Positions 2,798 through 47,979 of a stretch of DNA of 51,740 bases are shown here, in pieces. The notes beneath the pieces are model-generated. The model ran no database searches and was not told the origin of the DNA. It saw only the letters and a list, made by a program, of their open reading frames with translations. The stretch's first letter is position 1; each line of letters begins with the position of its first letter. Source of the stretch: Octopus bimaculoides (lineage: Eukaryota); the NCBI RefSeq assembly GCF_001194135.2, contig NC_068984.1, positions 83,258,868 through 83,310,607 of the forward strand, read 5' to 3'. The position numbers and the translations under genes are program-made.

Positions 2798-2917
2798 TCC
2801 ATAACGGCTACCTCTGATGAGCGCAGTGCTACATAATCGGATTGTTACCTAACATTCCGTTGAATCCGAAGCGCGAAACCGATTGGTAAGATCGGCAGTA
2901 ATGGATATATAGCACTG
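2798..2917 (+). ncRNA. Type I hammerhead ribozyme, extended stem II with pseudoknot
   Basis: CTGATGA 2814-2820; stem II GCGC 2821-2824 / GCGC 2871-2874; GAAA 2875-2878; stem III ACC-gatt-GGT 2878-2887; cleavage triplet GTA 2886-2888; stem I 2798-2813 pairs with 2889-2905 with internal mismatches. Folded by hand only. Confidence 0.8.
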
Positions 2918-4024
2918 TACACTTCGNNNNNNNNNNNNNNNNNNNNNNNNNNNNNNNNNNNNNNNNNNNNNNNNNNNNNNNNNNNNNNNNNNNNNNNNNN
3001 NNNNNNNNNNNNNNNNNNNNNNNNNNNNNNNNNNNNNNNNNNNNNNNNNNNNNNNNNNNNNNNNNNNNNNNNNNNNNNNNNNNNNNNNNNNNNNNNNNNN
3101 NNNNNNNNNNNNNNNNNNNNNNNNNNNNNNNNNNNNNNNNNNNNNNNNNNNNNNNNNNNNNNNNNNNNNNNNNNNNNNNNNNNNNNNNNNNNNNNNNNNN
3201 NNNNNNNNNNNNNNNNNNNNNNNNNNNNNNNNNNNNNNNNNNNNNNNNNNNNNNNNNNNNNNNNNNNNNNNNNNNNNNNNNNNNNNNNNNNNNNNNNNNN
3301 NNNNNNNNNNNNNNNNNNNNNNNNNNNNNNNNNNNNNNNNNNNNNNNNNNNNNNNNNNNNNNNNNNNNNNNNNNNNNNNNNNNNNNNNNNNNNNNNNNNN
3401 NNNNNNNNNNNNNNNNNNNNNNNNNNNNNNNNNNNNNNNNNNNNNNNNNNNNNNNNNNNNNNNNNNNNNNNNNNNNNNNNNNNNNNNNNNNNNNNNNNNN
3501 NNNNNNNNNNNNNNNNNNNNNNNNNNNNNNNNTATATATACACAAACATGTACACACACACACACACACACATCTGTATTTCTGCATATACCTCTGGGTA
3601 AGCGTCTAACAGCGCGTGTGTGGTATTTGTATATAATTTTATCCGTATATTTCTATCGTCATAAAGAGTTATCTATAACGTAAATATGAAGTCTTTTTGC
3701 AAGTTTTGTTTGATGTAGTCTTTAAATGGGGAGAGAATTACTTGACATTGATACCTTTCTTTTTGCGTATACATACGTAAATGGTAATTTATGTATGTAT
3801 GTATGCATGTATGTATGTATGTATGTATGTATGTATGTATGAATGCATGCATGCATTATGTATGTATGGGCGTATGAGTGTAAATATATTTACACGTAAA
3901 CAAACATATCAGTGTCGGTGGATAGATAAGTATATTTATATTTAAATATGAGTACACACAGTCACACACGCACGCACGCACACACACGCGCACACGCATA
4001 TATACATATACTTTTTAGCTTTAA

Positions 4025-4408
4025 GTTGTTTCAGTCATTAGATTGCGTCCAGGTTGGAGTACCTCGTTGAATTTTAATAGAACGAATCAAGCCGTGTACT
4101 TGTTGTTTAACCTGGTACTTAATCAATCCGTTCCTTTTGCGATACCACTAATTTACGGAGACATAAACACACCAACACCGGTTGTCAAGCGGTGGTGGGT
4201 GGCAAACACAGAGATAAAGGCATAAACATACACACATGCATGCATACATACATACATACACATACGTATGTATACCAAGGGCTTCTATCAGTTACCGTCT
4301 ACCAAATATACTCCCAAGGCTTTGGTCAGCCCAAGGCTATGGGCTATAGTAAAGGACACTTGCCCAAGGAGCCATGAATTGGAACTGAATCCAGAACCAC
4401 ATGGTTCA
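4025..4408 (-). mobile_element. SINE family C (long, central CA/TA microsatellite), diverged copy
   Basis: Collinear with copies at 44966-45570 and 47815-47979 (gacacttgcccaagg, gtctaccaaat, caccggttgtcaagcg blocks). Confidence 0.8.
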
Positions 4409-4478
4409 GAATGAAATGTAATCGACTAGCCCACTTTTCGAAAATACTTCAGGCTTTGTACCTATAGTAGAAAAAACT

Positions 4479-5700
4479 ATTATTATTATTTTTATTTATT
4501 GTCTTTGCACAGCTTCTGTCGCTGGAGATGTACTACGGTGCCAGCTGTTCACTGCCAGTGAACTAAGGTAACACCCCTTATTTTTCGAGCACCTTCCGGA
4601 GTATTCGAACGGTTCCAATCAGTGCTGTTTTCTGCAAGTGCTCCACCCTTATTGCAGCCCCTATTTGTTCCATGTACTTCTCAAGATTTTTACTCACTGT
4701 TCCCAGAGCTCCAACAATTATAGGTACTACTACCACCTTTTTCATCGTCCACAACTGCTTAATCTCTCAAGCTAACCTGTCATATCTATCGACTTTTCTT
4801 TCTTCCTTATCGCATACCTTGTTGTCGGTTGGGCATGCTATATCTATGATCCAGCATCGTTTGCTTTCTTTCTCAATTAACACTATGTCTGATTTCCTAT
4901 TCTCTATCTCATGGTTGCTCTGAATCATAAAATTCCATAGGATCTTTGCATTATCATTTTCGATGATGCCTTCGGGTTTTTGTTCGTACCACTTCTTTGC
5001 TCTGTCAGGTCTATACTTGCTGCTAAGTGTCCAATGGACAATCCTTGCTATATTGTCATGATGTCTCATATTCTTTCTGGGCTAGTGGCGTACATTGACT
5101 GGTAATATCCCATACAGTTTCTCCATTTTGTCCACAAATTCTGCACTTACCACTTTCTGATGTGTTGTCTATTCTGTATTTGATGTAATTCGTTCTTAGT
5201 GCTTGCTCTTGGGAAACACAGATTAGAGCCTCCGTTTCTGGCTTTAAATCACTTTTAGTCATCCACAGCTATCTTTTTTCTTTGTCTGTCTTATCTTCAA
5301 CATCTCTATGAAATTGTCCATGCAATTGTAAATTATCCATGTAGATTGTCTTTACCAACCTATTTTCAGTTTCATTCATTCTCAGGTGCTTTTACAGTGC
5401 TTTATCTTTGCAATCTTCCATCCTACACAAGCCTGACCTTCTTAGTTTCAATAACAGTAGTTCCGAGGCATTTTTTACATACCATACTAATTTGGTTTCT
5501 TCTGCTCTAACGCTGTGTTCGCATCCAATCAGTCTTCTTCCCCTCTTTTTCTTGGTACATACAGTCTGTCTGTGTCACTTTTGGATGGAGTATCCCATAT
5601 CTAGTCAGCAACTTCCTTGTCTTTCTGTCTAAGCTGTTTAGTTCGTCTACTATCCATGCGATTACCCCTTCTCCATATCTAAGGAGTGAAACCGCCCAGG
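4479..5700 (-). mobile_element. 5'-truncated R4/Dong-clade non-LTR retrotransposon (post-RT region, CCHC knuckle, REL endonuclease, 3' UTR, (TAA)n tail)
   Basis: Minus strand: NTWAVSLLRYG..LDRKTRKLLTRYG.LHPKSDTDRLY; DLKPETEALIC..QEQALRTNYIK; CRICGQNGETVWDITSQC; HDNIARIVHW; KSDIVLIEKESKRCWIIDIACP (PD..D nuclease); LRKVLEK-stop at 4578-4580; then a 3' UTR and TAA tail. Frameshifted. Confidence 0.92.
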
Positions 5701-7089: not shown

Positions 7090-8270
7090 CAATATCTGTA
7101 ACAATCAATTCTTGGAGTACAAACAATAGTTCAACCGACTATTCTTCTCCATTCATCTCTTATCTTCCACTGTTCTTATTAATTTTTGCATTTTTAATAA
7201 TGTTATCTTCTTATGCCATCGATTCAATTGTGTCTAAGTTTCTCTTTTGGTCCTTTTCTAGAGGCTTTTCCAGCAGCCAACCACATACAAAAATATATAC
7301 GGTTTCGTTTAATCTAACACATACTGATTTTTGTCGTTTTCACATTTGTTTAATCCTTTGTATTCTTCTATAACACTGAGTAAATCTCTATCGTTTTTTT
7401 TTTCTTTATATCAGCTCTTTTACATCAGAGTCCAACATTTAGATCTATATGTTATTGAAAATATCATGTGCAGTATCTTCAGGTTTATTGATAGATTTAC
7501 TTATTGATAGATATTTTCCCCTAAATCCGGTTTAAAAGGATAAGAGTATATTTTACTTTTTCAATTCTTATCTCCTTTCTGTCATCATATCGATTTGTAA
7601 TAATACTTCCAAGATAACAAAACTCATAAACCAATTTGACAGTTTCATTATCAATTATTATAGGAATATCTTCATCATCTCTTCCTCAGATAATCATTGA
7701 TTCAGTTTTGTTAAAATTAAGGAATAAACCATATTCTTCATTTTTTTTTTTGTCCCTTTCTACATCAGTACTCTTGATTCTTCAAGCTACCAGTAATAAG
7801 GACAGTATCATTGACAAATCTGAGAGTGGTGACCATTCATCCCCTGATTTTTAACTGTACCTTCAAAACATTCTAAAGCTTTCCTCATTATATGATGTGT
7901 TAAACAGAGAGAAGAACGAACGCTTCCTTGTCGTACCTTACCACCCTCTTAATCTTAAACCATTCACTAAAGCACGCATTAGTTTTGACAGTTGCAGTTT
8001 ATTAAGAATAACGTGATTTTAATAATTCTATAAAATGCCGTGGAAATCTCATTTATGCCATCACTAACCAAAATATCTCATGAATAACTTTGTCAAAAGC
8101 TTTTTGATAGCCATTGAAAGCAATAAATAATTTTCCAGCACGCTCTCTAGTTTTCTGAACAACCATCTTTGGATTAAGAGTAGCATCTCTTGTTCCTCTT
8201 CCAGATCTAGAACTAACTTGTCCCCCTGTGATCCCCATTACATATTTCACTTTAATTCTATAGCCAATAA
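7090..8270 (-). mobile_element. RTE-clade LINE 3' fragment (decayed RT and C-terminus)
   Basis: Minus strand: SGRGTRDATLN..FIAFNGYQKAFDKVIHEIFW; TLRFVNDTVLI (YADD position); EFCYLGSIIT; CWTL..; EWRRIV. Many stops and frameshifts. Confidence 0.85.
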
Positions 8271-8560
8271 ATATGAGTGTGTGTGTGTGTATGTGTGTAT
8301 GCATGCATGCATATATGCATGTATGTATGTGTATATATAAACAGATAGAGAAAGTAGAAAACAAGAGAGTTCTGTACTTCTGTGATTGAATGGGCAGATG
8401 AGATTGTATGTGTGAGTGTAAGTTTATATATGAGTAAGGGTTTCTATAAGAATATAAATTTCATGAAGCTTTCGGATATTATTCAACTTGTGAAGTTCCT
8501 GCGACACTTGTGAAAAATGCTTATTCCCCATAGACTTTATAATGTTAATACTAATAAACT

Positions 8561-8922
8561 TTTCTAATATAGGCACAAGGAGAAGAGGCTTGTTTTCATC
8601 TGGTACTTATTGCATCGATCCCAAAATGATGAAAAACGAAGTCGACCTCGGTGGAATTTGAACTCAGTAGGTAAAGATCCAGAAGATCTGAGGTTTTAAC
8701 GATTCTTTTGACTCGCTGCCTAATAATCCTTTCAGCTATAGGCACAAGGCCTAAAATGTTTTTGTGGAGGCGATGGATATAGTCGATTAAATCGATCCCA
8801 GTGTTCAACCGGTACTTATCGATCCTATAAGGATGAAAAGCAGAGCTGACCTCCGCAGGATTTGAACTCAGAACATGAAGATGGACAATATGCCACAAAA
8901 CATTTTGGCCAGCATGCTAACG

Positions 8923-8980
<58 letters not shown>

Positions 8981-9168
8981 TAACAATAATAACAATAATA
9001 ATAATAATAGTTTCAAATTTTTTCACAAGGGCAGCAATTTTGGGGCGGGGGATGAGTCGATTACATCGACCCACTGGTACTTACTTTACCGACCTCGAAA
9101 GGATGAATGGCAAAGTCGACCTCGGCGGAATTAGAACTCAGAACGTAGTGACAGGCGAAATACCGTAA
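8561..9168 (-). mobile_element. Three co-oriented SINE family A copies (8561-8677, 8730-8924, 9010-9168) interleaved with (AAT)n
   Basis: Each carries gtcgacctc-gg-gaatttgaactcag and ggtactta blocks, reverse-complementary to the family A core. Confidence 0.85.
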
Positions 9169-28278: not shown

Positions 28279-29225
28279 TGAGTGTATGCATATATATATA
28301 CAGACACACATACATACAGTTTATAAAGTATTCATTTTCATATAAATTTTAGACATTAATATATGTATTCACATGCCCACGCACATACGTACACACACAC
28401 ACACATCCATACATGCATGATCGTTTTACAGTATGTTTCGTCTCTGTCATCTCCGAGTTCAAATACCGCCTCGGTATATATAAAAAAATTACGGTTCGAT
28501 CAATAAAGCACCATTCGAATGGATTGCTTGAATTATTGTCACTTGAACTCAGAATGTAAAGAGCTTTCACAGAGGTCTGAAGGTATCTCTACCAACGAAC
28601 GCTGTTACACAGTAATTAAACGAGTCCCTCGAGACCCGGCTAACCCTGATAAGACTCCAGTGTTAGAATGAGCTATGTGTTGATTAGGGTATCACATCGG
28701 TCGTATTAATAAACAAGTGGACTCCGCAGAAAGCGGAATAAACTTTAGGACAGAAAAAACTTGTCTTTTATTGAAACAAATCATCACCACTATTTGTCTC
28801 GACCTTCCTTGTTTTTAGTTTTGTAATATGTATGTACGTACTCTACAGAAATGAACAAAACTACATTATTAACGTGTAGAATATAGTCGACCTCAACATA
28901 TCGGTACATTTTCATTGACATTGCACAAGATATGAAACTAACATTTGCTAGAAATAACATCCGAATCAACCTTAAATCATATTCTACCATTTAAAGAAAA
29001 GAACATATTGGATAATGTATTTTAGAATAAAATTTTCAAAACAGATGGGTCAATAACTGCCAGCCTCCTCTGCAGATTAAAATATAAAGAAGAACAAAAG
29101 ACATTTTGTTCCTCACTACCAACAGTGCACTCTGTTTTATATTACTTCTGTAGTCCAGTACTGCCGATCAGACAATTCGCTGACAGTTCCAGTGGCAGTT
29201 AAGCTTTAATATAAGAAGAGTTTAA

Positions 29226-29778
29226 GGCAGCGAGCTAGCAGAAACGTTAGCACGCCGAGAGAAATGCTTAGCGGTATTTCGTCTGCCGTTACGTTCTGAG
29301 TTCAAATTCCGCCGAGGTCGACTTTGCCTTTCATCCTTTCAGGGTCGATAAATCAAGTACCAGTTACGCACTGGGGTCGATGTAATCGACTTAATCCGTT
29401 CGTCTGTTCTTGTTTGTTCCCTCTATGTTTAGCCCCTTGTGGGCAATAACGAAATAAGTATTTCGTCTGCCGCTACGTTCTGAGTTCAAATTCTGCCGAG
29501 GTCAACTTTGCCTTTCGTCCCTTCGGAGTCGATTAAATAAGTAAGTACCAGTTATGCACTGGGGTCGATATAATCGACTTAATCCGTTTGTCTGACCTTG
29601 TTTGTCCCCTCTGTGTGTAGTCCCTTGTGGGCAGTAAAGAAATAAGAAACGTTAGCGCGCCGGGCGAATGCTTAACGGTATTTCGTCTATTTTTACGTTT
29701 TGAGTTCAAATTCCACCGAGGTCGACTTTGCCTTTCATTCTTTCGGGGTCGATAAATTAAGTACTGGTTGCGTACTGG
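29226..29778 (+). mobile_element. Head-to-tail trimer of SINE family A (long-tail subfamily)
   Basis: Copies 29226-29458, 29459-29646 (5'-truncated) and 29647-29778 (5'- and 3'-truncated). Each has gagttcaaatt and gtc(g/a)actttgcctttc. Confidence 0.92.
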
Positions 29779-36537: not shown

Positions 36538-37308
36538 TTGCTATTCGCATCAAGCAAATTCAACTGAAAAAGTACTCTAACCAGTGCGAGACAAATATCA
36601 TTTAATGTACATAATGTAAAGATATGAGTTACTAATAGTTTCATGCTTTGGAAACACGGGTCGAGGCAGGTTTTTAAAATACACTTTGCATCTCCAAGCA
36701 ATTTTTGGGTTCTGAGTACATATTCTACACAATTTTTGAATCAGGACGGTGGTACAGATTGCAATACGTAATGTGACAGAATATATAATCTTTTTTAATC
36801 ATAGATTACTGCAATTGTACCTCGGGCATACACGTGCGCGCGTACAGACACACAGACACCCCTTACACACACACGCACACAAACAAGCAAAAAGCATACA
36901 CAGGTACACACATTTAAACAGTTTGGAAGATATACTTTCGCGCGGTAGGATGTGATAGAGCAAATAAGGTAAGTTTTTTAAAGAAAGCATACTTTTCCTA
37001 TTTTACTCGCATCGTTTTCTGAATCACTCAAAATTCAATCATGCGACGAAGTATACTTTTTAACAAACTGGCTGAAACTACACACCCTACGAAACGTACT
37101 TGGACGTTCTGAAGCTGTTTTACAAGTTGGTTTCAGTTGACCGTGTGAAATTATCTGTACTCTAGCATCAGCTTTGAGTACTTTTTCTCCGAATCCGTTA
37201 CGTCTAACGAAAGTAAATATATACATCCATCCATCCATACACACACACGGATACATGTATACATACGAACATGTATATATACGAACATGTATATATACGT
37301 GTGTGTGT

Positions 37309-37362
<54 letters not shown>

Positions 37363-37978
37363 AAGATTGATATAATACATATTATGTGAGAGTATAATAT
37401 GCATTATATTAGTACTTACAATAGCGAGAACACAAGTATACACAGTGAAATACACATGTCTTAAGGAATGAACACATGTCTATTATACAGGCATAATGTA
37501 ACATCCCAACACACTTACCATTCCATCCAAAATTCTGCTACAAACCACTATAGTTTGACAATCCATCATCGATGTTTGCCCCATTTCTTTACTGCCGTTC
37601 CAACAGCTGAATGTATATCAACACGGACTGAAACAATGAATCGCTAGGCAATTGATGGCTTGGTTTTGTCTAAATTTACTATAAAGTCAGTAATAAATCT
37701 GTCTGAATGTATATCCGCCTGTCTTCCTGCGTCTTTGTATATTTTATGGCTATATCTAGCTAGCTAATGAGATATATATGATATAATATAATATAATATA
37801 ATATAATATAATATATGTGGAAGCACATATATACATATTTACATACATGCATACACACACACACACACACACACACAGAGTAAAATCTATTGGCCAACAC
37901 AACGTGGCAAATCGACTTTACTGTTCGGTATTGTTATTACATATTTCTCGTTCAGAAATTTTAAACTTGTTGTTTCTC

Positions 37979-38400: not shown

Positions 38401-38896
38401 AATCGATTTCTGTCAGGGCGAGTTTAACTCACAAAACATGAGACGACCAGAATTAATGCTAAAACCATTTGCCCAAGTTACCATGCTTGGCGATTAAGCA
38501 TAAGGACTCCAGGTGGAAAGCGATCTTCTTAGTTATTCAATCATGTATATATGCTTATGTCCTTATATACGGACACACCTACCCATCCACACACACACAC
38601 ACACACACACAAATTTGCGTATGTGTTCCATACATATCTGTGATTATATGCCTATGTTCACCGAAGAACATCAGATGAAGAATCCTAGAATTGTTTTATA
38701 AATTTTCAGTGTTATCTGATCGACTGTACCTGGAGAAAGCGAATCAGTTTGCTCTTTTCGTTTTTTGGTGAAGCCAAATTTTCTAGGTTTCTATGTAAAT
38801 TTCTTGCTACATAACTCAGTAAATCTATGATAACAGGAACAAATGAAAATTTGTAGCCTCAATATAAGAAACATAGGTTTCTTATTATTGGTTTAA

Positions 38897-39112
38897 GGCA
38901 ACGAAATGGCAGAATCGTTAGGACGCCGGGCAAAATGTTTAGCGGCATTTCGCCCGTCTTTACGCTGAGTTCAAATTTCGCTTAGGTTGACTTTGTCTTT
39001 CATCTTTTGGGGGTCGATAAAATAAGTACCAGTTGAGCACTGAGGTCGATAATTGATTTAGAACCACCCACCCACCTCCGAACTTGCTGGCTTTGTGCCA
39101 AAATTTTAAACC
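38897..39112 (+). mobile_element. SINE family A
   Basis: ggcagaatcgttagg..gagttcaaatttcg..gggtcgataaaataagtaccagttg..aaattttaaaccatt. Confidence 0.85.
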
Positions 39113-44020: not shown

Positions 44021-44132
44021 TGGCAGCAGCAGTAGCACCAGCACCAACAGCAGCAGCACCAACAGCACCAGCACCAGCAGCGGCGGCAGTGGCGGTAACA
44101 AACTTACTGTCTTAGAAAAGAAAGATACAAAC

Positions 44133-44302
44133 GCAGCGAGCTGGCAGAAACGTTAGCACACCGGGCGAAATGCTTAGCGGTATTTCGTCTGCCGTTACGC
44201 TCTGAGTTCAAATTCCGCTGAGGTCGACTTTGCCTTTCATCCTTTCGGGGTCGAAAAATTAAGTACCAGTTACGCACTGGGGTCGTTATAATCGACTTAA
44301 TC
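44133..44302 (+). mobile_element. SINE family A, young copy (runs into a gap)
   Basis: Nearly identical to 29226-29400 and 45906-46070. Confidence 0.92.
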
Positions 44303-44965: not shown

Positions 44966-45570
44966 TTTTTCATCCGACTGCGCCCATGCTGAGGCACCGG
45001 CTCGAAGGATCTTAGACAAACAACTCGACACCAGTACATTTTTGTTGCCGAACCACTTGGTTAGGAGGACGCTGAGCAGTGGTTTTCAACTGAGGTCCAT
45101 ATGGCCCTTGGTGGCCCCATATAAGATTTTGTTGTTAAAATTTATATGCAATAAATTGGTCATACTTCTTCATTACATCTAATATTTTCTTATACAATTT
45201 CTAATAATATCTCATTATAAAAATGTAATAGGACATTTAAAACTTCGAATGGCTATGGAGGCCCAGTAGAGTAAAATAGAAATTAAAGGAAATGGTTGAG
45301 GAGCACTGATGTAAATGAACCAACACCGGCTGTCAAGCGATGGTGTGTGTGGGAGGGTCAAACACAAGCACAGGCACACACACACACTCACATGCATGCA
45401 CACACACACATACACTGTGTATACGACAGACTTCCACAGTTTCCATTCACCAAATCCACTCACAAGGTCTTGGTCGGCCCGAGGCTATAGAAGAAGACAC
45501 TTTCTCAAGATGCCGCGCAGTGGGACTGAACCCAAAAGCAAATGATTAAGAAGCTCGCTTCATAACCACT
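44966..45570 (-). mobile_element. SINE family C interrupted by a hAT-type MITE
   Basis: Family C blocks are collinear on both sides of 45077-45308. Confidence 0.8.
45077..45308. mobile_element. hAT (Charlie/MER20-like) MITE
   Basis: TIRs CAGTGGTTTTCAAC and GTTGAGGAGCACTG; the 8-bp flanks (acgctgag / atgtaaat) match only poorly. Confidence 0.7.
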
Positions 45571-45905: not shown

Positions 45906-46128
45906 CTGGCAGAAACGTTAGCACGCTGGGCGAAATGCTTAGCGGTATTTCGTCTGCCGCTACGTTCTGAGTTCAAATTCCGCCGAGGTCGACTTTGCCT
46001 TTCATCCTTTCGGGGTCGATTAAATAAGTACCAGTTACGAACTGGGGTCGATATAATCGACTTAATCCGTTTGTCTGTCCTTGTTTGTCCCCTCTCTGTG
46101 TAGCCCCTTGTGGGTAGTAAAGAAATAA
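45906..46128 (+). mobile_element. SINE family A, long-tail subfamily, young copy
   Basis: ctggcagaaacgttagc..gagttcaaattccgccgaggtcgactttgcc..gtagtaaagaaataa. Confidence 0.92.
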
Positions 46129-47814: not shown

Positions 47815-47979
47815 ACGGACTTCTTTCAGTTTCCGTCGACCAAATCCATCCACTCACAAGGCTTTGGTTGGCGCGAGGCTATAGTAAAAGACACTTGCCC
47901 AAGGTGCCATGCCACGGGACTGAACCTGGATACATGCGGTTGAGAAGCAAACTTCTTACCACATAGCCATGCCTGCGCC
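47815..47979 (-). mobile_element. SINE family C, 5' half with tRNA-like head
   Basis: Minus strand: ggcgcaggcatggctatgtggtaagaag..ggttcagtccc..ggcaccttgggcaagtgtc. Confidence 0.88.

What the first reader, a model, noticed from the sequence alone, without database searches (positions are those of the whole stretch)
2798..2917. Apparently intact type I hammerhead ribozyme with a long branched stem II and a pseudoknot to the 3' flank
Seen: all core nucleotides are present in order (CUGAUGA 2814-2820, G10.1-C11.1 in a 4-bp GCGC/GCGC stem II, GAAA 2875-2878, stem III A-U/C-G/C-G around GAUU, GUA site cleaving after 2888). Stem I pairs 2798-2813 with 2889-2905, about 12 pairs with internal mismatches. 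Stem II holds a 46-nt insertion with its own helix, TCGGATT 2837-2843 / AATCCGA 2863-2869. Its internal loop AGTGCTAcATA 2825-2835 is complementary (10 of 11) to TATaTAGCACT 2906-2916, just beyond stem I. Established: natural hammerheads need stem I-stem II tertiary contacts, and in metazoans they occur in Penelope elements, satellites and retrozymes. Inference: a Watson-Crick pseudoknot provides the tertiary clamp here, and this expanded architecture may mark an undescribed mollusc ribozyme or retrozyme family. Caveat: only 2 Watson-Crick pairs sit next to the core in stem I.
Basis: partly seen in the sequence, partly recalled or inferred. Interest (0 to 1): 0.88.

Follow-up and report, generated by a model that had tools for sequence, protein, structure and literature searches.

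The report
Lone hammerhead-like motif, ribozyme unproven
The sequence really does contain every conserved hammerhead-ribozyme nucleotide in the right order, but it is a single copy with a poor stem I, nothing in its proposed extra architecture rises above chance, and no related copy could be found, so it is a candidate for a cleavage assay, not a new ribozyme family.

Summary
CUGAUGA, a 4-bp GCGC/GCGC stem II with G10.1-C11.1, GAAA, a 3-bp stem III with GAUU loop and a GUA site all sit at the stated coordinates.

In composition-matched random sequence, core plus stems II and III occur about 1.8e-8 times per base. That is about 1.6e-3 per window and about 100 per 2.7-Gb genome. Adding G10.1-C11.1 and two or more stem I pairs gives about 1e-5 per window and about 1 per genome.

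Everything that made the finding exciting is unsupported:
- Stem I complementarity: p 0.06-0.11.
- The 7-bp "pseudoknot": p 0.12.
- The helix inside stem II: p 0.06.
- With the core fixed, insert and flanks support the hammerhead fold no better than shuffles (z -0.1 to -0.6).

A competing hairpin (2879-2884/2890-2895) that buries the cleavage site has 94-97% ensemble probability. No Rfam hammerhead model matches, even at E<=10. The window holds no paralogue, upstream tandem repeat, Penelope-like ORF or second hammerhead. Public collections gave no relative.

My reading: a crippled relic of a retroelement-type type I hammerhead (about 0.45), a chance match (about 0.37), or an active new architecture (about 0.13).

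The parts
2798..2813 (+). Proposed stem I, 5' strand (UCCAUAACGGCUACCU)
   Evidence: Only U2813-A2889 and C2812-G2890 pair next to the core. The remaining pairs are interrupted by a 2x3 internal loop and two 1x1 mismatches. Duplex energy -10.7 kcal/mol, p 0.06-0.11.
2814..2820 (+). CUGAUGA box (C3-A9) of the hammerhead core
   Evidence: It is one of 9 CTGATGA heptamers in the window, and the only one followed by a full motif.
2821..2874 (+). Stem II: GCGC 2821-2824 / GCGC 2871-2874 (G10.1-C11.1) closing a 46-nt insert (2825-2870)
   Evidence: Validated metazoan type I hammerheads have 4 bp plus a 5-6 nt loop here (PMC4209133). Ensemble probability of these 4 pairs is 0-4%.
2837..2869 (+). Helix inside the insert: UCGGAUU 2837-2843 / AAUCCGA 2863-2869. 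It competes with CGGA-UGUU/AACA-UCCG (2838-2846/2851-2859).
   Evidence: A 7-bp perfect hairpin occurs in 6% of 46-nt control segments. The MFE and the constrained fold both choose the competing hairpin.
2875..2878 (+). GAAA box (G12, A13, A14, A15.1)
2878..2887 (+). Stem III hairpin ACC-GAUU-GGU (A15.1-U16.1, C-G, C-G). It is self-complementary as a dimer only through two G.U pairs.
   Evidence: self-duplex -14.4 kcal/mol. Ensemble probability about 3%. It is also about 0 in real hammerheads, so this does not discriminate.
2888..2888 (+). A17; predicted scissile bond 3' of this base (GUA site)
   Evidence: GUA is used by the validated axolotl Ax353 hammerhead.
2889..2905 (+). Proposed stem I, 3' strand (AGAUCGGCAGUAAUGGA)
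2906..2916 (+). Proposed pseudoknot strand UAUaUAGCACU, complementary to 2825-2835
   Evidence: The contiguous 7-bp core has -8.7 kcal/mol. A match this long is seen in 12% of genomic control geometries.
2879..2895 (+). Competing hairpin CCGAUU-GGUAA-GAUCGG. It puts A2888 in its loop and uses strands of stems III and I.
   Evidence: Ensemble pair probabilities are 0.89-0.97 in three different sequence contexts. It is retained in the dimer MFE.
2823..2918 (+). Long-range nested helix GCAGUGCUA 2823-2831 / UAGCACUGU 2910-2918. It unzips the outer two pairs of stem II.
   Evidence: probability 0.86-1.0, -12.7 kcal/mol.
2927..3532 (.). Assembly gap (606 N) 38 nt after the predicted cleavage site. 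It hides any downstream repeat unit.

Best explanation
It is a solitary DNA copy derived from the type I hammerhead ribozymes that metazoan retroelements carry (the Penelope-like element / non-LTR retrozyme lineage), and it is no longer, or only marginally, a working ribozyme.

If transcribed on the + strand, the RNA keeps the 13 core nucleotides, a canonical 4-bp helix II closed by G10.1-C11.1, and a canonical short helix III with a GUA site. So the chemistry would be the usual one: in-line attack of the 2'-OH of A2888 on the adjacent phosphate.

Three things would keep almost all molecules out of the active fold:
- Helix I is mispaired. Four of the six canonical positions pair, and only two are contiguous with the core.
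- Loop 2 is replaced by a 46-nt segment.
- The 3' strand of helix I prefers to pair with the 5' strand of helix III.

Shown: the motif, its rarity by chance within one window, and the lack of support for the accessory helices. Inferred: descent from a retroelement hammerhead, and inactivity.
For: - The full core, helix II and helix III are present. It is the only hit in the window and has a chance rate of 1.8e-8 per base.
- It also has hallmarks the descriptor did not demand and chance hits lack. G10.1-C11.1 was seen in 1 of 28 random hits. It matches the GAAAY/RUH boxes listed in the PMC7229834 supplement, with C15.2-G16.2 as in all four constructs there. It has a 4-bp helix II and a 2-bp-plus-tetraloop helix III, as described for invertebrate hammerheads (PMC7229834, PMC4209133).
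- With these hallmarks, I expect about 1 or fewer chance matches per 2.7-Gb genome (my arithmetic).
- Cephalopod genomes do carry such ribozymes: 235 Rfam Hammerhead_1 loci in the giant squid (PMC6962438).
- Most retroelement hammerheads occur as dispersed single motifs from truncated elements (PMC4209133).
- For inactivity: helix I has 2 contiguous pairs versus 6 in the coral, mussel and axolotl controls. The competing hairpin has 94-97% probability and stems I and II 4% or less. The hammerhead-compatible fold is 7 kcal/mol above the MFE. The dimer MFE does not form the extended helix III. There is no Rfam hit.
Against: - No homologous copy was found anywhere, so descent is not demonstrated.
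- The window has no Penelope-like ORF, GIY-YIG or YxDD motif, no PLE-type minimal hammerhead and no tandem repeat upstream.
- A neutral relic with two helix I mismatches and a 41-nt gain in a 5-nt loop, yet no change in 27 core and stem positions, needs some luck.
- My odds of relic versus chance range from about 0.1:1 to about 100:1, depending on guessed frequencies of long loop 2 and weak helix I among true hammerheads.
- That the window is from a cephalopod rests on my memory of a repeat element and was not verified.
- Thermodynamic prediction is a weak guide. The active mussel hammerhead also shows only 8% probability for helix II.
Confidence: 0.45

Rival explanations
1. It is a chance match. 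Ordinary non-functional intergenic DNA happens to contain CTGATGA, GAAA and short complementary tetramers and trimers at a permissive spacing, and no ribozyme was ever encoded here.
For: - The hammerhead consensus is so small that matches are expected by chance in large databases (PMC3088659).
- The basic descriptor hits 1.8e-8 per base, which is about 100 per 2.7-Gb genome on both strands.
- The long CUGAUGA-to-GAAA spacing is typical of random hits and not of real ones. 13 of 28 random hits had loops of 30 nt or more, whereas all validated controls have 5-6 nt.
- The partial pattern CTGATGAGCGC-N35-60-GCGCGAAAC alone occurs more than 120 times in metagenomic contigs whose local sequence is G+C-rich (mean 63%), with no similarity to this locus and no Rfam hammerhead call in the 12 that also have a stem III.
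- Stem I, the pseudoknot and the inner helix are all within chance. The constrained-fold z-scores are -0.13 to -0.58 and the MFE z-score is -0.78.
- There is no Rfam hit at E<=10. It is a singleton with no retroelement context.
Against: - For one 51.7-kb window the expectation is only about 1.6e-3. It falls to about 1e-5 once G10.1-C11.1 and two or more stem I pairs are required.
- C15.2-G16.2, the tetraloop helix III and 4 of 6 pairs in canonical helix I lower it further.
- So this explanation needs the first-stage scan to have covered very many windows, which I cannot know.
Confidence: 0.37
2. It is an active type I hammerhead of a new architecture. A 4-bp helix II opens into a branched 46-nt domain, and its internal loop (2825-2835) pairs with the tail just 3' of helix I (2906-2916). 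This would hold helices I and II parallel in place of the usual loop-loop contacts. It might mark a new mollusc ribozyme or retrozyme family, with further units hidden in the adjacent gap.
For: - The core is complete.
- The 10-of-11 complementarity exists and its 7-bp core is worth -8.7 kcal/mol.
- Pseudoknots do serve as the helix I-II contact in many natural hammerheads of all three types, including a human intronic one (PMC3088659).
- A Penelope hammerhead with only a 2-bp helix I exists in Drosophila virilis (PMC4209133).
- The levels of the two pseudoknot ends along helices I and II are roughly compatible (my geometric reasoning).
- Tandem retrozyme arrays are the kind of sequence that collapses into assembly gaps, and a gap starts 38 nt after the cleavage site.
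Against: - None of the accessory pairings exceeds chance.
- In the nested ensemble the same 2825-2831/2910-2916 pairing extends into stem II and abolishes it.
- The competing hairpin sequesters the cleavage site.
- The strand must reverse direction between helix I and the pseudoknot helix with no linker nucleotide.
- Perreault et al. found that small changes in pseudoknot spacing cost orders of magnitude in rate.
- There is no paralogue, covariation or upstream repeat unit, and no Rfam support.
Confidence: 0.13
3. It is part of another repeat, either a tRNA-derived SINE head (A-box-like GAGCGCAGTGC, B-box-like CGTTGAATCCG) or a decayed LINE ORF, and the hammerhead likeness is incidental.
For: - By eye and from memory, 2819-2829 and 2858-2868 look like Pol III A and B boxes.
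- By eye and from memory, 2330-2530 looks like an RT motif.
- The window is rich in SINE-like and LINE fragments.
Against: - ARAGORN finds no tRNA, and Rfam finds no tRNA or SINE-related hit at E<=10.
- Local alignment to the window's SINE-like copy is at chance level, p 0.30.
- There is no nucleotide or protein-level similarity to any other part of the window.
- Pfam finds nothing in the putative RT fragment or in the three + frames of the candidate region.
- Homologue searches with the flanking ORFs find nothing.
Confidence: 0.05

Closest known systems
Canonical metazoan type I hammerheads of non-LTR retrozymes and satellite repeats (Mytilus, Acropora, Schistosoma, newt/axolotl; Rfam Hammerhead_1, RF00163)
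   Same: - Type I topology (helices II and III capped).
- CUGAUGA / GAAAC / GUA boxes, with G10.1-C11.1 and C15.2-G16.2.
- A 4-bp helix II.
- Helix III of A-U plus 2 bp capped by a tetraloop that can self-pair in a dimer.
- A low-G+C animal genome.
   Different: - Loop 2 is 46 nt instead of 5-6.
- Helix I has 2 contiguous pairs instead of 6.
- No recognisable loop 1 / loop 2 tertiary nucleotides.
- Loop 3 is self-complementary only through G.U pairs.
- No 170-400 bp tandem repeat upstream.
- No Rfam match, even at E<=10.
[quoted passage not shown]
   Same: - Often found as dispersed single motifs from truncated elements.
- Weak helix I is tolerated (2 bp in D. virilis).
- Low activity as a monomer.
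- PLEs insert preferentially in microsatellites, and this locus lies between CA/TG-rich tracts.
   Different: - PLE motifs have a long helix II (6-8 bp), a bulged base between A9 and G10.1, and little or no helix III.
- No PLE ORF (RT plus GIY-YIG) or pLTR could be recognised in the window.
- Microsatellites are everywhere in this window, so their proximity means little.
Pseudoknot-stabilised hammerheads (Perreault et al. 2011: type II consensus, human C10orf118 intronic hammerhead)
   Same: The idea that Watson-Crick pairing between a helix I element and a strand adjoining helix II replaces the loop-loop contacts. Here the helix II side strand also starts directly after a short helix II.
   Different: - The known pseudoknots are 4-6 bp and link loop I (about 5-6 bp from the core) with the tail of helix II.
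- Here the partner would be the tail beyond a 17-nt interrupted helix I, giving an 11-position helix running alongside helix I.
- No covariation or biochemical support exists, and the pairing is not above chance (p 0.12).

Membership tests
Hammerhead ribozyme (any type) | Conserved core in order: C3 U4 G5 A6 N7 G8 A9 ... G12 A13 A14 ... H17 | tested here: met
   CTGATGA 2814-2820, GAA 2875-2877, A2888. It is the only descriptor hit in the window.
Hammerhead ribozyme (any type) | A15.1-U16.1 and G10.1-C11.1 pairs closing helices III and II | tested here: met
   A2878-T2887 and G2821-C2874. Only 1 of 28 random descriptor hits has G10.1-C11.1.
Hammerhead ribozyme (any type) | Three helices radiating from the core, including a helix I that begins at 1.1-2.1 | tested here: inconclusive
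   Helices II (4 bp) and III (3 bp) are present. Helix I has 2 WC pairs and then mismatches, and its overall duplex energy has p 0.06-0.11. Ensemble probability of the proximal helix I pairs is about 0.
Hammerhead ribozyme (any type) | Match to a curated covariance model (Rfam Hammerhead_1, _3, _II, HH9, HH10) | tested here: not met
   No hit at gathering score on the whole window. No hammerhead hit at E<=10 in the 328-nt or the 131-nt searches.
Hammerhead ribozyme (any type) | Site-specific Mg2+-dependent self-cleavage 3' of H17 | not testable with these tools
   Needs in vitro transcription and a cleavage assay.
Hammerhead ribozyme (any type) | Homologues with a conserved core and compensatory changes in the helices | tested here: inconclusive
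   No homologue was found in the window, in metagenome, viral or prokaryote collections or among 1.84 billion protein representatives via the overlapping ORF. No animal genome collection was searchable at the DNA level.
Canonical metazoan type I hammerhead / non-LTR retrozyme | Helix I of about 6 bp, helix II of 4 bp with a short loop 2, and loop 1-loop 2 tertiary contacts | tested here: not met
   The 4-bp helix II is met. Loop 2 is 46 nt versus 5-6, and helix I has 2 contiguous pairs versus 6 in the coral, mussel and axolotl constructs (PMC4209133).
Canonical metazoan type I hammerhead / non-LTR retrozyme | Short helix III (1-2 bp beyond 15.1-16.1) capped by a 2-4 nt palindromic loop | tested here: inconclusive
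   There are 2 bp plus the tetraloop GAUU. The loop is self-complementary only with two G.U pairs, whereas the four validated constructs are perfect palindromes.
Canonical metazoan type I hammerhead / non-LTR retrozyme | Located in head-to-tail repeats of about 170-400 bp | tested here: inconclusive
   There is no repeat of 2600-2926 upstream or anywhere else in the window. Downstream is an assembly gap, 2927-3532.
Penelope-like element hammerhead | Lies in a pLTR next to an ORF with RT and a GIY-YIG endonuclease; helix II of 6-8 bp with a bulged base after A9 | tested here: not met
   There are no GIY-YIG or YxDD motifs in any frame of the window. Pfam finds nothing in the flanking frames. 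No min-HHR motif is present. Helix II is 4 bp without a bulge. A truncated solo copy cannot be excluded.
Pseudoknot-stabilised hammerhead | 4 or more Watson-Crick pairs between the helix I and helix II peripheries that are conserved or covary and are needed for fast cleavage | tested here: inconclusive
   The complementarity is present (7 contiguous pairs, 10 of 11) but is expected in 12% of control geometries. Covariation and mutational tests were not possible.

The most novel reading that the evidence does not exclude
The motif is the first seen member of a cephalopod or mollusc hammerhead family in which loop 2 has grown into a branched domain. A roughly 10-bp pseudoknot to the 3' flank of a long, loosely paired helix I would replace the canonical loop-loop clamp, and further units of a retrozyme-like repeat would be hidden in the adjacent assembly gap.
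Probability: 0.12. Interest if true: 0.55.

Novelty: new member of a known kind. Interest (0 to 1): 0.3.

Why it matters
If it cleaves, it would add a structural variant to a very well-studied ribozyme class: an expanded helix II with a long pseudoknot clamp. It would also give a handle on hammerhead-bearing retroelements in cephalopods, which have barely been described. That would be a modest advance, because both metazoan type I hammerheads and pseudoknot clamps are already known.

If it does not cleave, it is a useful cautionary case. A perfect core with textbook helices II and III can sit in a sequence whose remaining "architecture" is indistinguishable from chance. Consensus matching alone therefore overcalls ribozymes in Gb-size genomes.

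Tried and rejected
1. Rfam at gathering score and at E<=10 gave no hammerhead. The only hit in the candidate was a weak Transposase-2 RNA match (17 bits, E 0.14).
2. Paralogue search in the window with blastn word size 7 found only microsatellite hits. TRF found no tandem repeat.
3. Public collections:
   - Exact 23-mer in metagenomes: 0 hits.
   - Structural pattern in viral contigs: 0 hits.
   - Structural pattern in metagenomes: more than 120 hits, in locally G+C-rich sequence and unrelated to this locus.
   - Specific pattern in prokaryote genomes: 0 hits.
4. Reaching paralogues through spurious ORFs: the 31-aa ORF over the motif against 1.84 billion representatives gave 0 hits.
5. Finding the same locus in another assembly to fill the gap failed.
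   - Exact look-ups of two nearby ORFs were not on record.
   - Homologue searches with the flanking antisense ORF and with a putative RT fragment found nothing.
   - The LINE ORF led only to an unrelated ENA contig, L121, with 75% LINE similarity.
6. tRNA/SINE origin was rejected. LINE-ORF origin was not supported.
7. Target-site duplication GTAAG(T)CGTCTAA on either side of the candidate plus gap: p 0.11, rejected.
8. Dimeric hammerhead through an extended helix III is not favoured in cofold.
9. CpG content: 9 CpG in 120 nt, observed/expected 1.43 versus 0.81 for the window. This is partly forced by the GCGC stems and is not informative.
10. A custom covariance model from the four validated constructs was abandoned, because MAFFT misaligned helix III and loop 2.
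11. Literature search for the sequence strings returned only unrelated primers.

Full report
**What is there.** On the + strand these elements are present:
- CTGATGA at 2814-2820.
- GCGC 2821-2824 pairing with GCGC 2871-2874, giving G10.1-C11.1.
- GAAA at 2875-2878.
- A helix III of A2878-T2887, C2879-G2886 and C2880-G2885 around the loop GATT.
- A GTA site ending at A2888.

Between the two halves of helix II lie 46 nt, containing TCGGATT 2837-2843 / AATCCGA 2863-2869. AGTGCTAcATA 2825-2835 is complementary at 10 of 11 positions to TATaTAGCACT 2906-2916. Helix I can be drawn with 12 pairs, but only two of them (2812-13/2889-90) adjoin the core. A 606-base run of N begins at 2927.

The window is a draft eukaryotic scaffold: 22 gaps, about 37% G+C, dense microsatellites, SINE-like repeats and LINE remnants. 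One repeat looks to me like an abundant octopus element, but that is memory, not a test.

**Is it more than chance?** I wrote a descriptor requiring CTGATGA, helix II of 4 or more Watson-Crick pairs with a loop of 3-60 nt, GAAA, helix III of 3 or more pairs with a loop of 3-10 nt, U16.1 and a non-G at position 17.
- The candidate is the only hit on either strand of the window, even with relaxed settings.
- In 1.56 Gb of random sequence with the window's base composition there were 28 hits, or 1.8e-8 per base.
- That is about 1.6e-3 per window, and about 100 per 2.7-Gb genome counting both strands.
- Only 1 of the 28 had G10.1-C11.1 and 3 of the 28 had two or more helix I pairs.
- Requiring both brings the expectation to roughly 1e-5 per window and about 1 per genome.

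So the core motif is unlikely to be an accident of this particular window. It is still the kind of thing a genome-scale scan will turn up by accident now and then, as Perreault et al. warn (PMC3088659).

**The accessory architecture is not above chance.**
- Helix I: duplex energy -10.7 kcal/mol, equalled by 6% of equally spaced genomic control pairs and 11% of shuffles.
- Pseudoknot: 7 or more contiguous Watson-Crick pairs between a 46-nt segment and a 38-nt flank occur in 12% of controls.
- Inner helix: a 7-bp hairpin occurs in 6% of 46-nt controls.
- With core and helices II and III held fixed, the hammerhead-compatible fold (-23.6 kcal/mol) is no more stable than after shuffling the insert (z -0.49), the flanks (z -0.13) or both (z -0.58).
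- The unconstrained MFE (-30.9 kcal/mol, z -0.78) is not a hammerhead.
- In the ensemble, the hairpin CCGAUU 2879-2884 / GAUCGG 2890-2895 places A2888 in its loop and consumes strands of helices III and I. It has 89-97% probability in three sequence contexts.
- A nested helix 2823-2831/2910-2918 has 86-100% probability and opens helix II. Helix II has 4% or less, and the proximal helix I pairs about 0.
- A two-molecule fold does not form the extended helix III expected of dimeric hammerheads.

**Positive controls.** The supplement of Cervera and de la Pena 2020 (PMC7229834) gives four retrozyme constructs, from coral, mussel and axolotl, with their hammerhead cleavage sites marked. I analysed three of them (coral Amil224, mussel Mg353, axolotl Ax353).
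- All three have six contiguous helix I pairs. Their helix II is 4 bp closed by a 5-nt loop.
- All four constructs have C15.2-G16.2 and a perfectly palindromic helix III.
- Helix I probability in the three analysed is 0.15-0.9.
- Helix III probability is about 0 in them too, and helix II is only 0.08 in the active mussel ribozyme.
- Thermodynamic prediction alone therefore cannot condemn the candidate.
- Ax353 cleaves at GUA, so the candidate's site is acceptable.
- The candidate shares the boxes, the 4-bp helix II and the short tetraloop helix III with these ribozymes. It differs in helix I (2 contiguous pairs, 4 of the 6 canonical positions) and in loop 2 (46 nt).

**Database tests.**
- No Rfam family reaches its gathering score anywhere in the window.
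- No hammerhead model appears at E<=10 when only 328 nt or 131 nt are searched with lax filters.
- The only weak hit inside the candidate is Transposase-2 RNA (17.1 bits, gathering score 42.7, E 0.14). It aligns the GAAGCGCGAA string and the competing hairpin, and is probably chance.

**Context and relatives.**
- Nothing in the window resembles 2600-2926 apart from microsatellite tracts, and there is no tandem repeat.
- There is no tRNA.
- No GIY-YIG or YxDD motif occurs in any frame, and there is no Penelope-type minimal hammerhead.
- Pfam finds nothing in the flanking frames.
- My ideas that the region derives from the window's SINE-like repeat, or lies in a decayed LINE ORF, failed.
- A short direct repeat on either side of the candidate plus gap is not significant.
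- Exact and structural patterns found no relative in metagenomic, viral or prokaryotic collections.
- The 31-aa ORF across the motif has no relative among 1.84 billion protein representatives.
- I could not reach another assembly of the locus.
- No animal genome collection can be searched by DNA with these tools, so the decisive paralogue test remains undone.

**Weighing.** Cephalopod genomes do contain type I hammerheads: 235 Rfam Hammerhead_1 loci in the giant squid (PMC6962438). Most retroelement hammerheads are dispersed single motifs (PMC4209133).

I combined that density with the hallmarks the candidate has (G10.1-C11.1, C15.2-G16.2, tetraloop helix III, 4 of 6 helix I positions). I set these against the oddities it has (46-nt loop 2, interrupted helix I, no Rfam score) and against the measured chance rate. 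My central estimate is about 3:1 for descent from a real hammerhead over pure chance. The range spans 0.1:1 to 100:1, because the frequencies of long loop 2 and weak helix I among true hammerheads are guesses.

Given descent, the lack of any statistical support for the insert, the pseudoknot or helix I, together with the strong competing folds, makes a crippled relic more likely than a working new architecture. I therefore put:
- About 0.45 on a relic or marginal hammerhead.
- About 0.37 on chance.
- About 0.13 on an active pseudoknot-clamped variant.
- About 0.05 on incidental membership of another repeat.

**Comparison with what is known.** It works, if at all, like any type I hammerhead. 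As for membership, it meets the core definition but fails the curated models and the canonical metazoan helix I and loop 2 features. It shows none of the Penelope-element context. A pseudoknot clamp would have precedent in all three hammerhead types (PMC3088659), so even the boldest reading is a variant of a known kind.

**Verdict.** This is a candidate worth one cleavage assay and one genome-wide search, not a discovery. Interest 0.3.

Noticed in passing
window 2868-2914 (+): Weak Rfam match to Transposase-2 RNA (RF03015): 17.1 bits against a gathering score of 42.7, E 0.14 in a 131-nt search. It aligns GAAGCGCGAA and the CCGAUU/GAUCGG hairpin, and was not listed in the 328-nt search. Probably chance.
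   Followed up: partly
window 8775-9165, 29220-29778, 38891-39060, 44130-44302, 45906-46128; also 4171-4411, 45319-45552, 47817-47924: Two interspersed repeat families at 70-94% identity, one with three tandem copies at 29.2-29.8 kb. From memory they resemble an abundant octopus SINE-like element with an internal microsatellite. The taxon was not verified.
   Followed up: partly
window 37243-37868 and 41685-41042: Inverted duplication of about 660 nt at 79% identity, about 3.2 kb apart.
   Followed up: no
window 4503-5223 (-) and about 7500-8300 (-): Decayed LINE-type ORF remnants. The first is 75% identical at the DNA level to two copies in an ENA long-read contig (ERZ25066843, locus L121) that carries RVT_1 ORFs. 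The best protein relative has 72% identity.
   Followed up: partly
whole window: 22 runs of N totalling 7543 bases, and very dense CA/TG, TATG, ATAG and ATT microsatellites. Reading frames through them give long spurious Cys/Val/Tyr/His-rich ORFs.
   Followed up: no
loci L016, L048, L071 (metagenome contigs): Three independent metagenomic contigs share the same 76-nt CTGATGAGCGC...GCGCGAAAC stretch followed by ACCTTCCGGTA, a complete hammerhead-like core with a long helix II spacer. L097 and L111 share another. Rfam calls none of them. They could be conserved coding sequence or unrecognised bacterial hammerheads.
   Followed up: no
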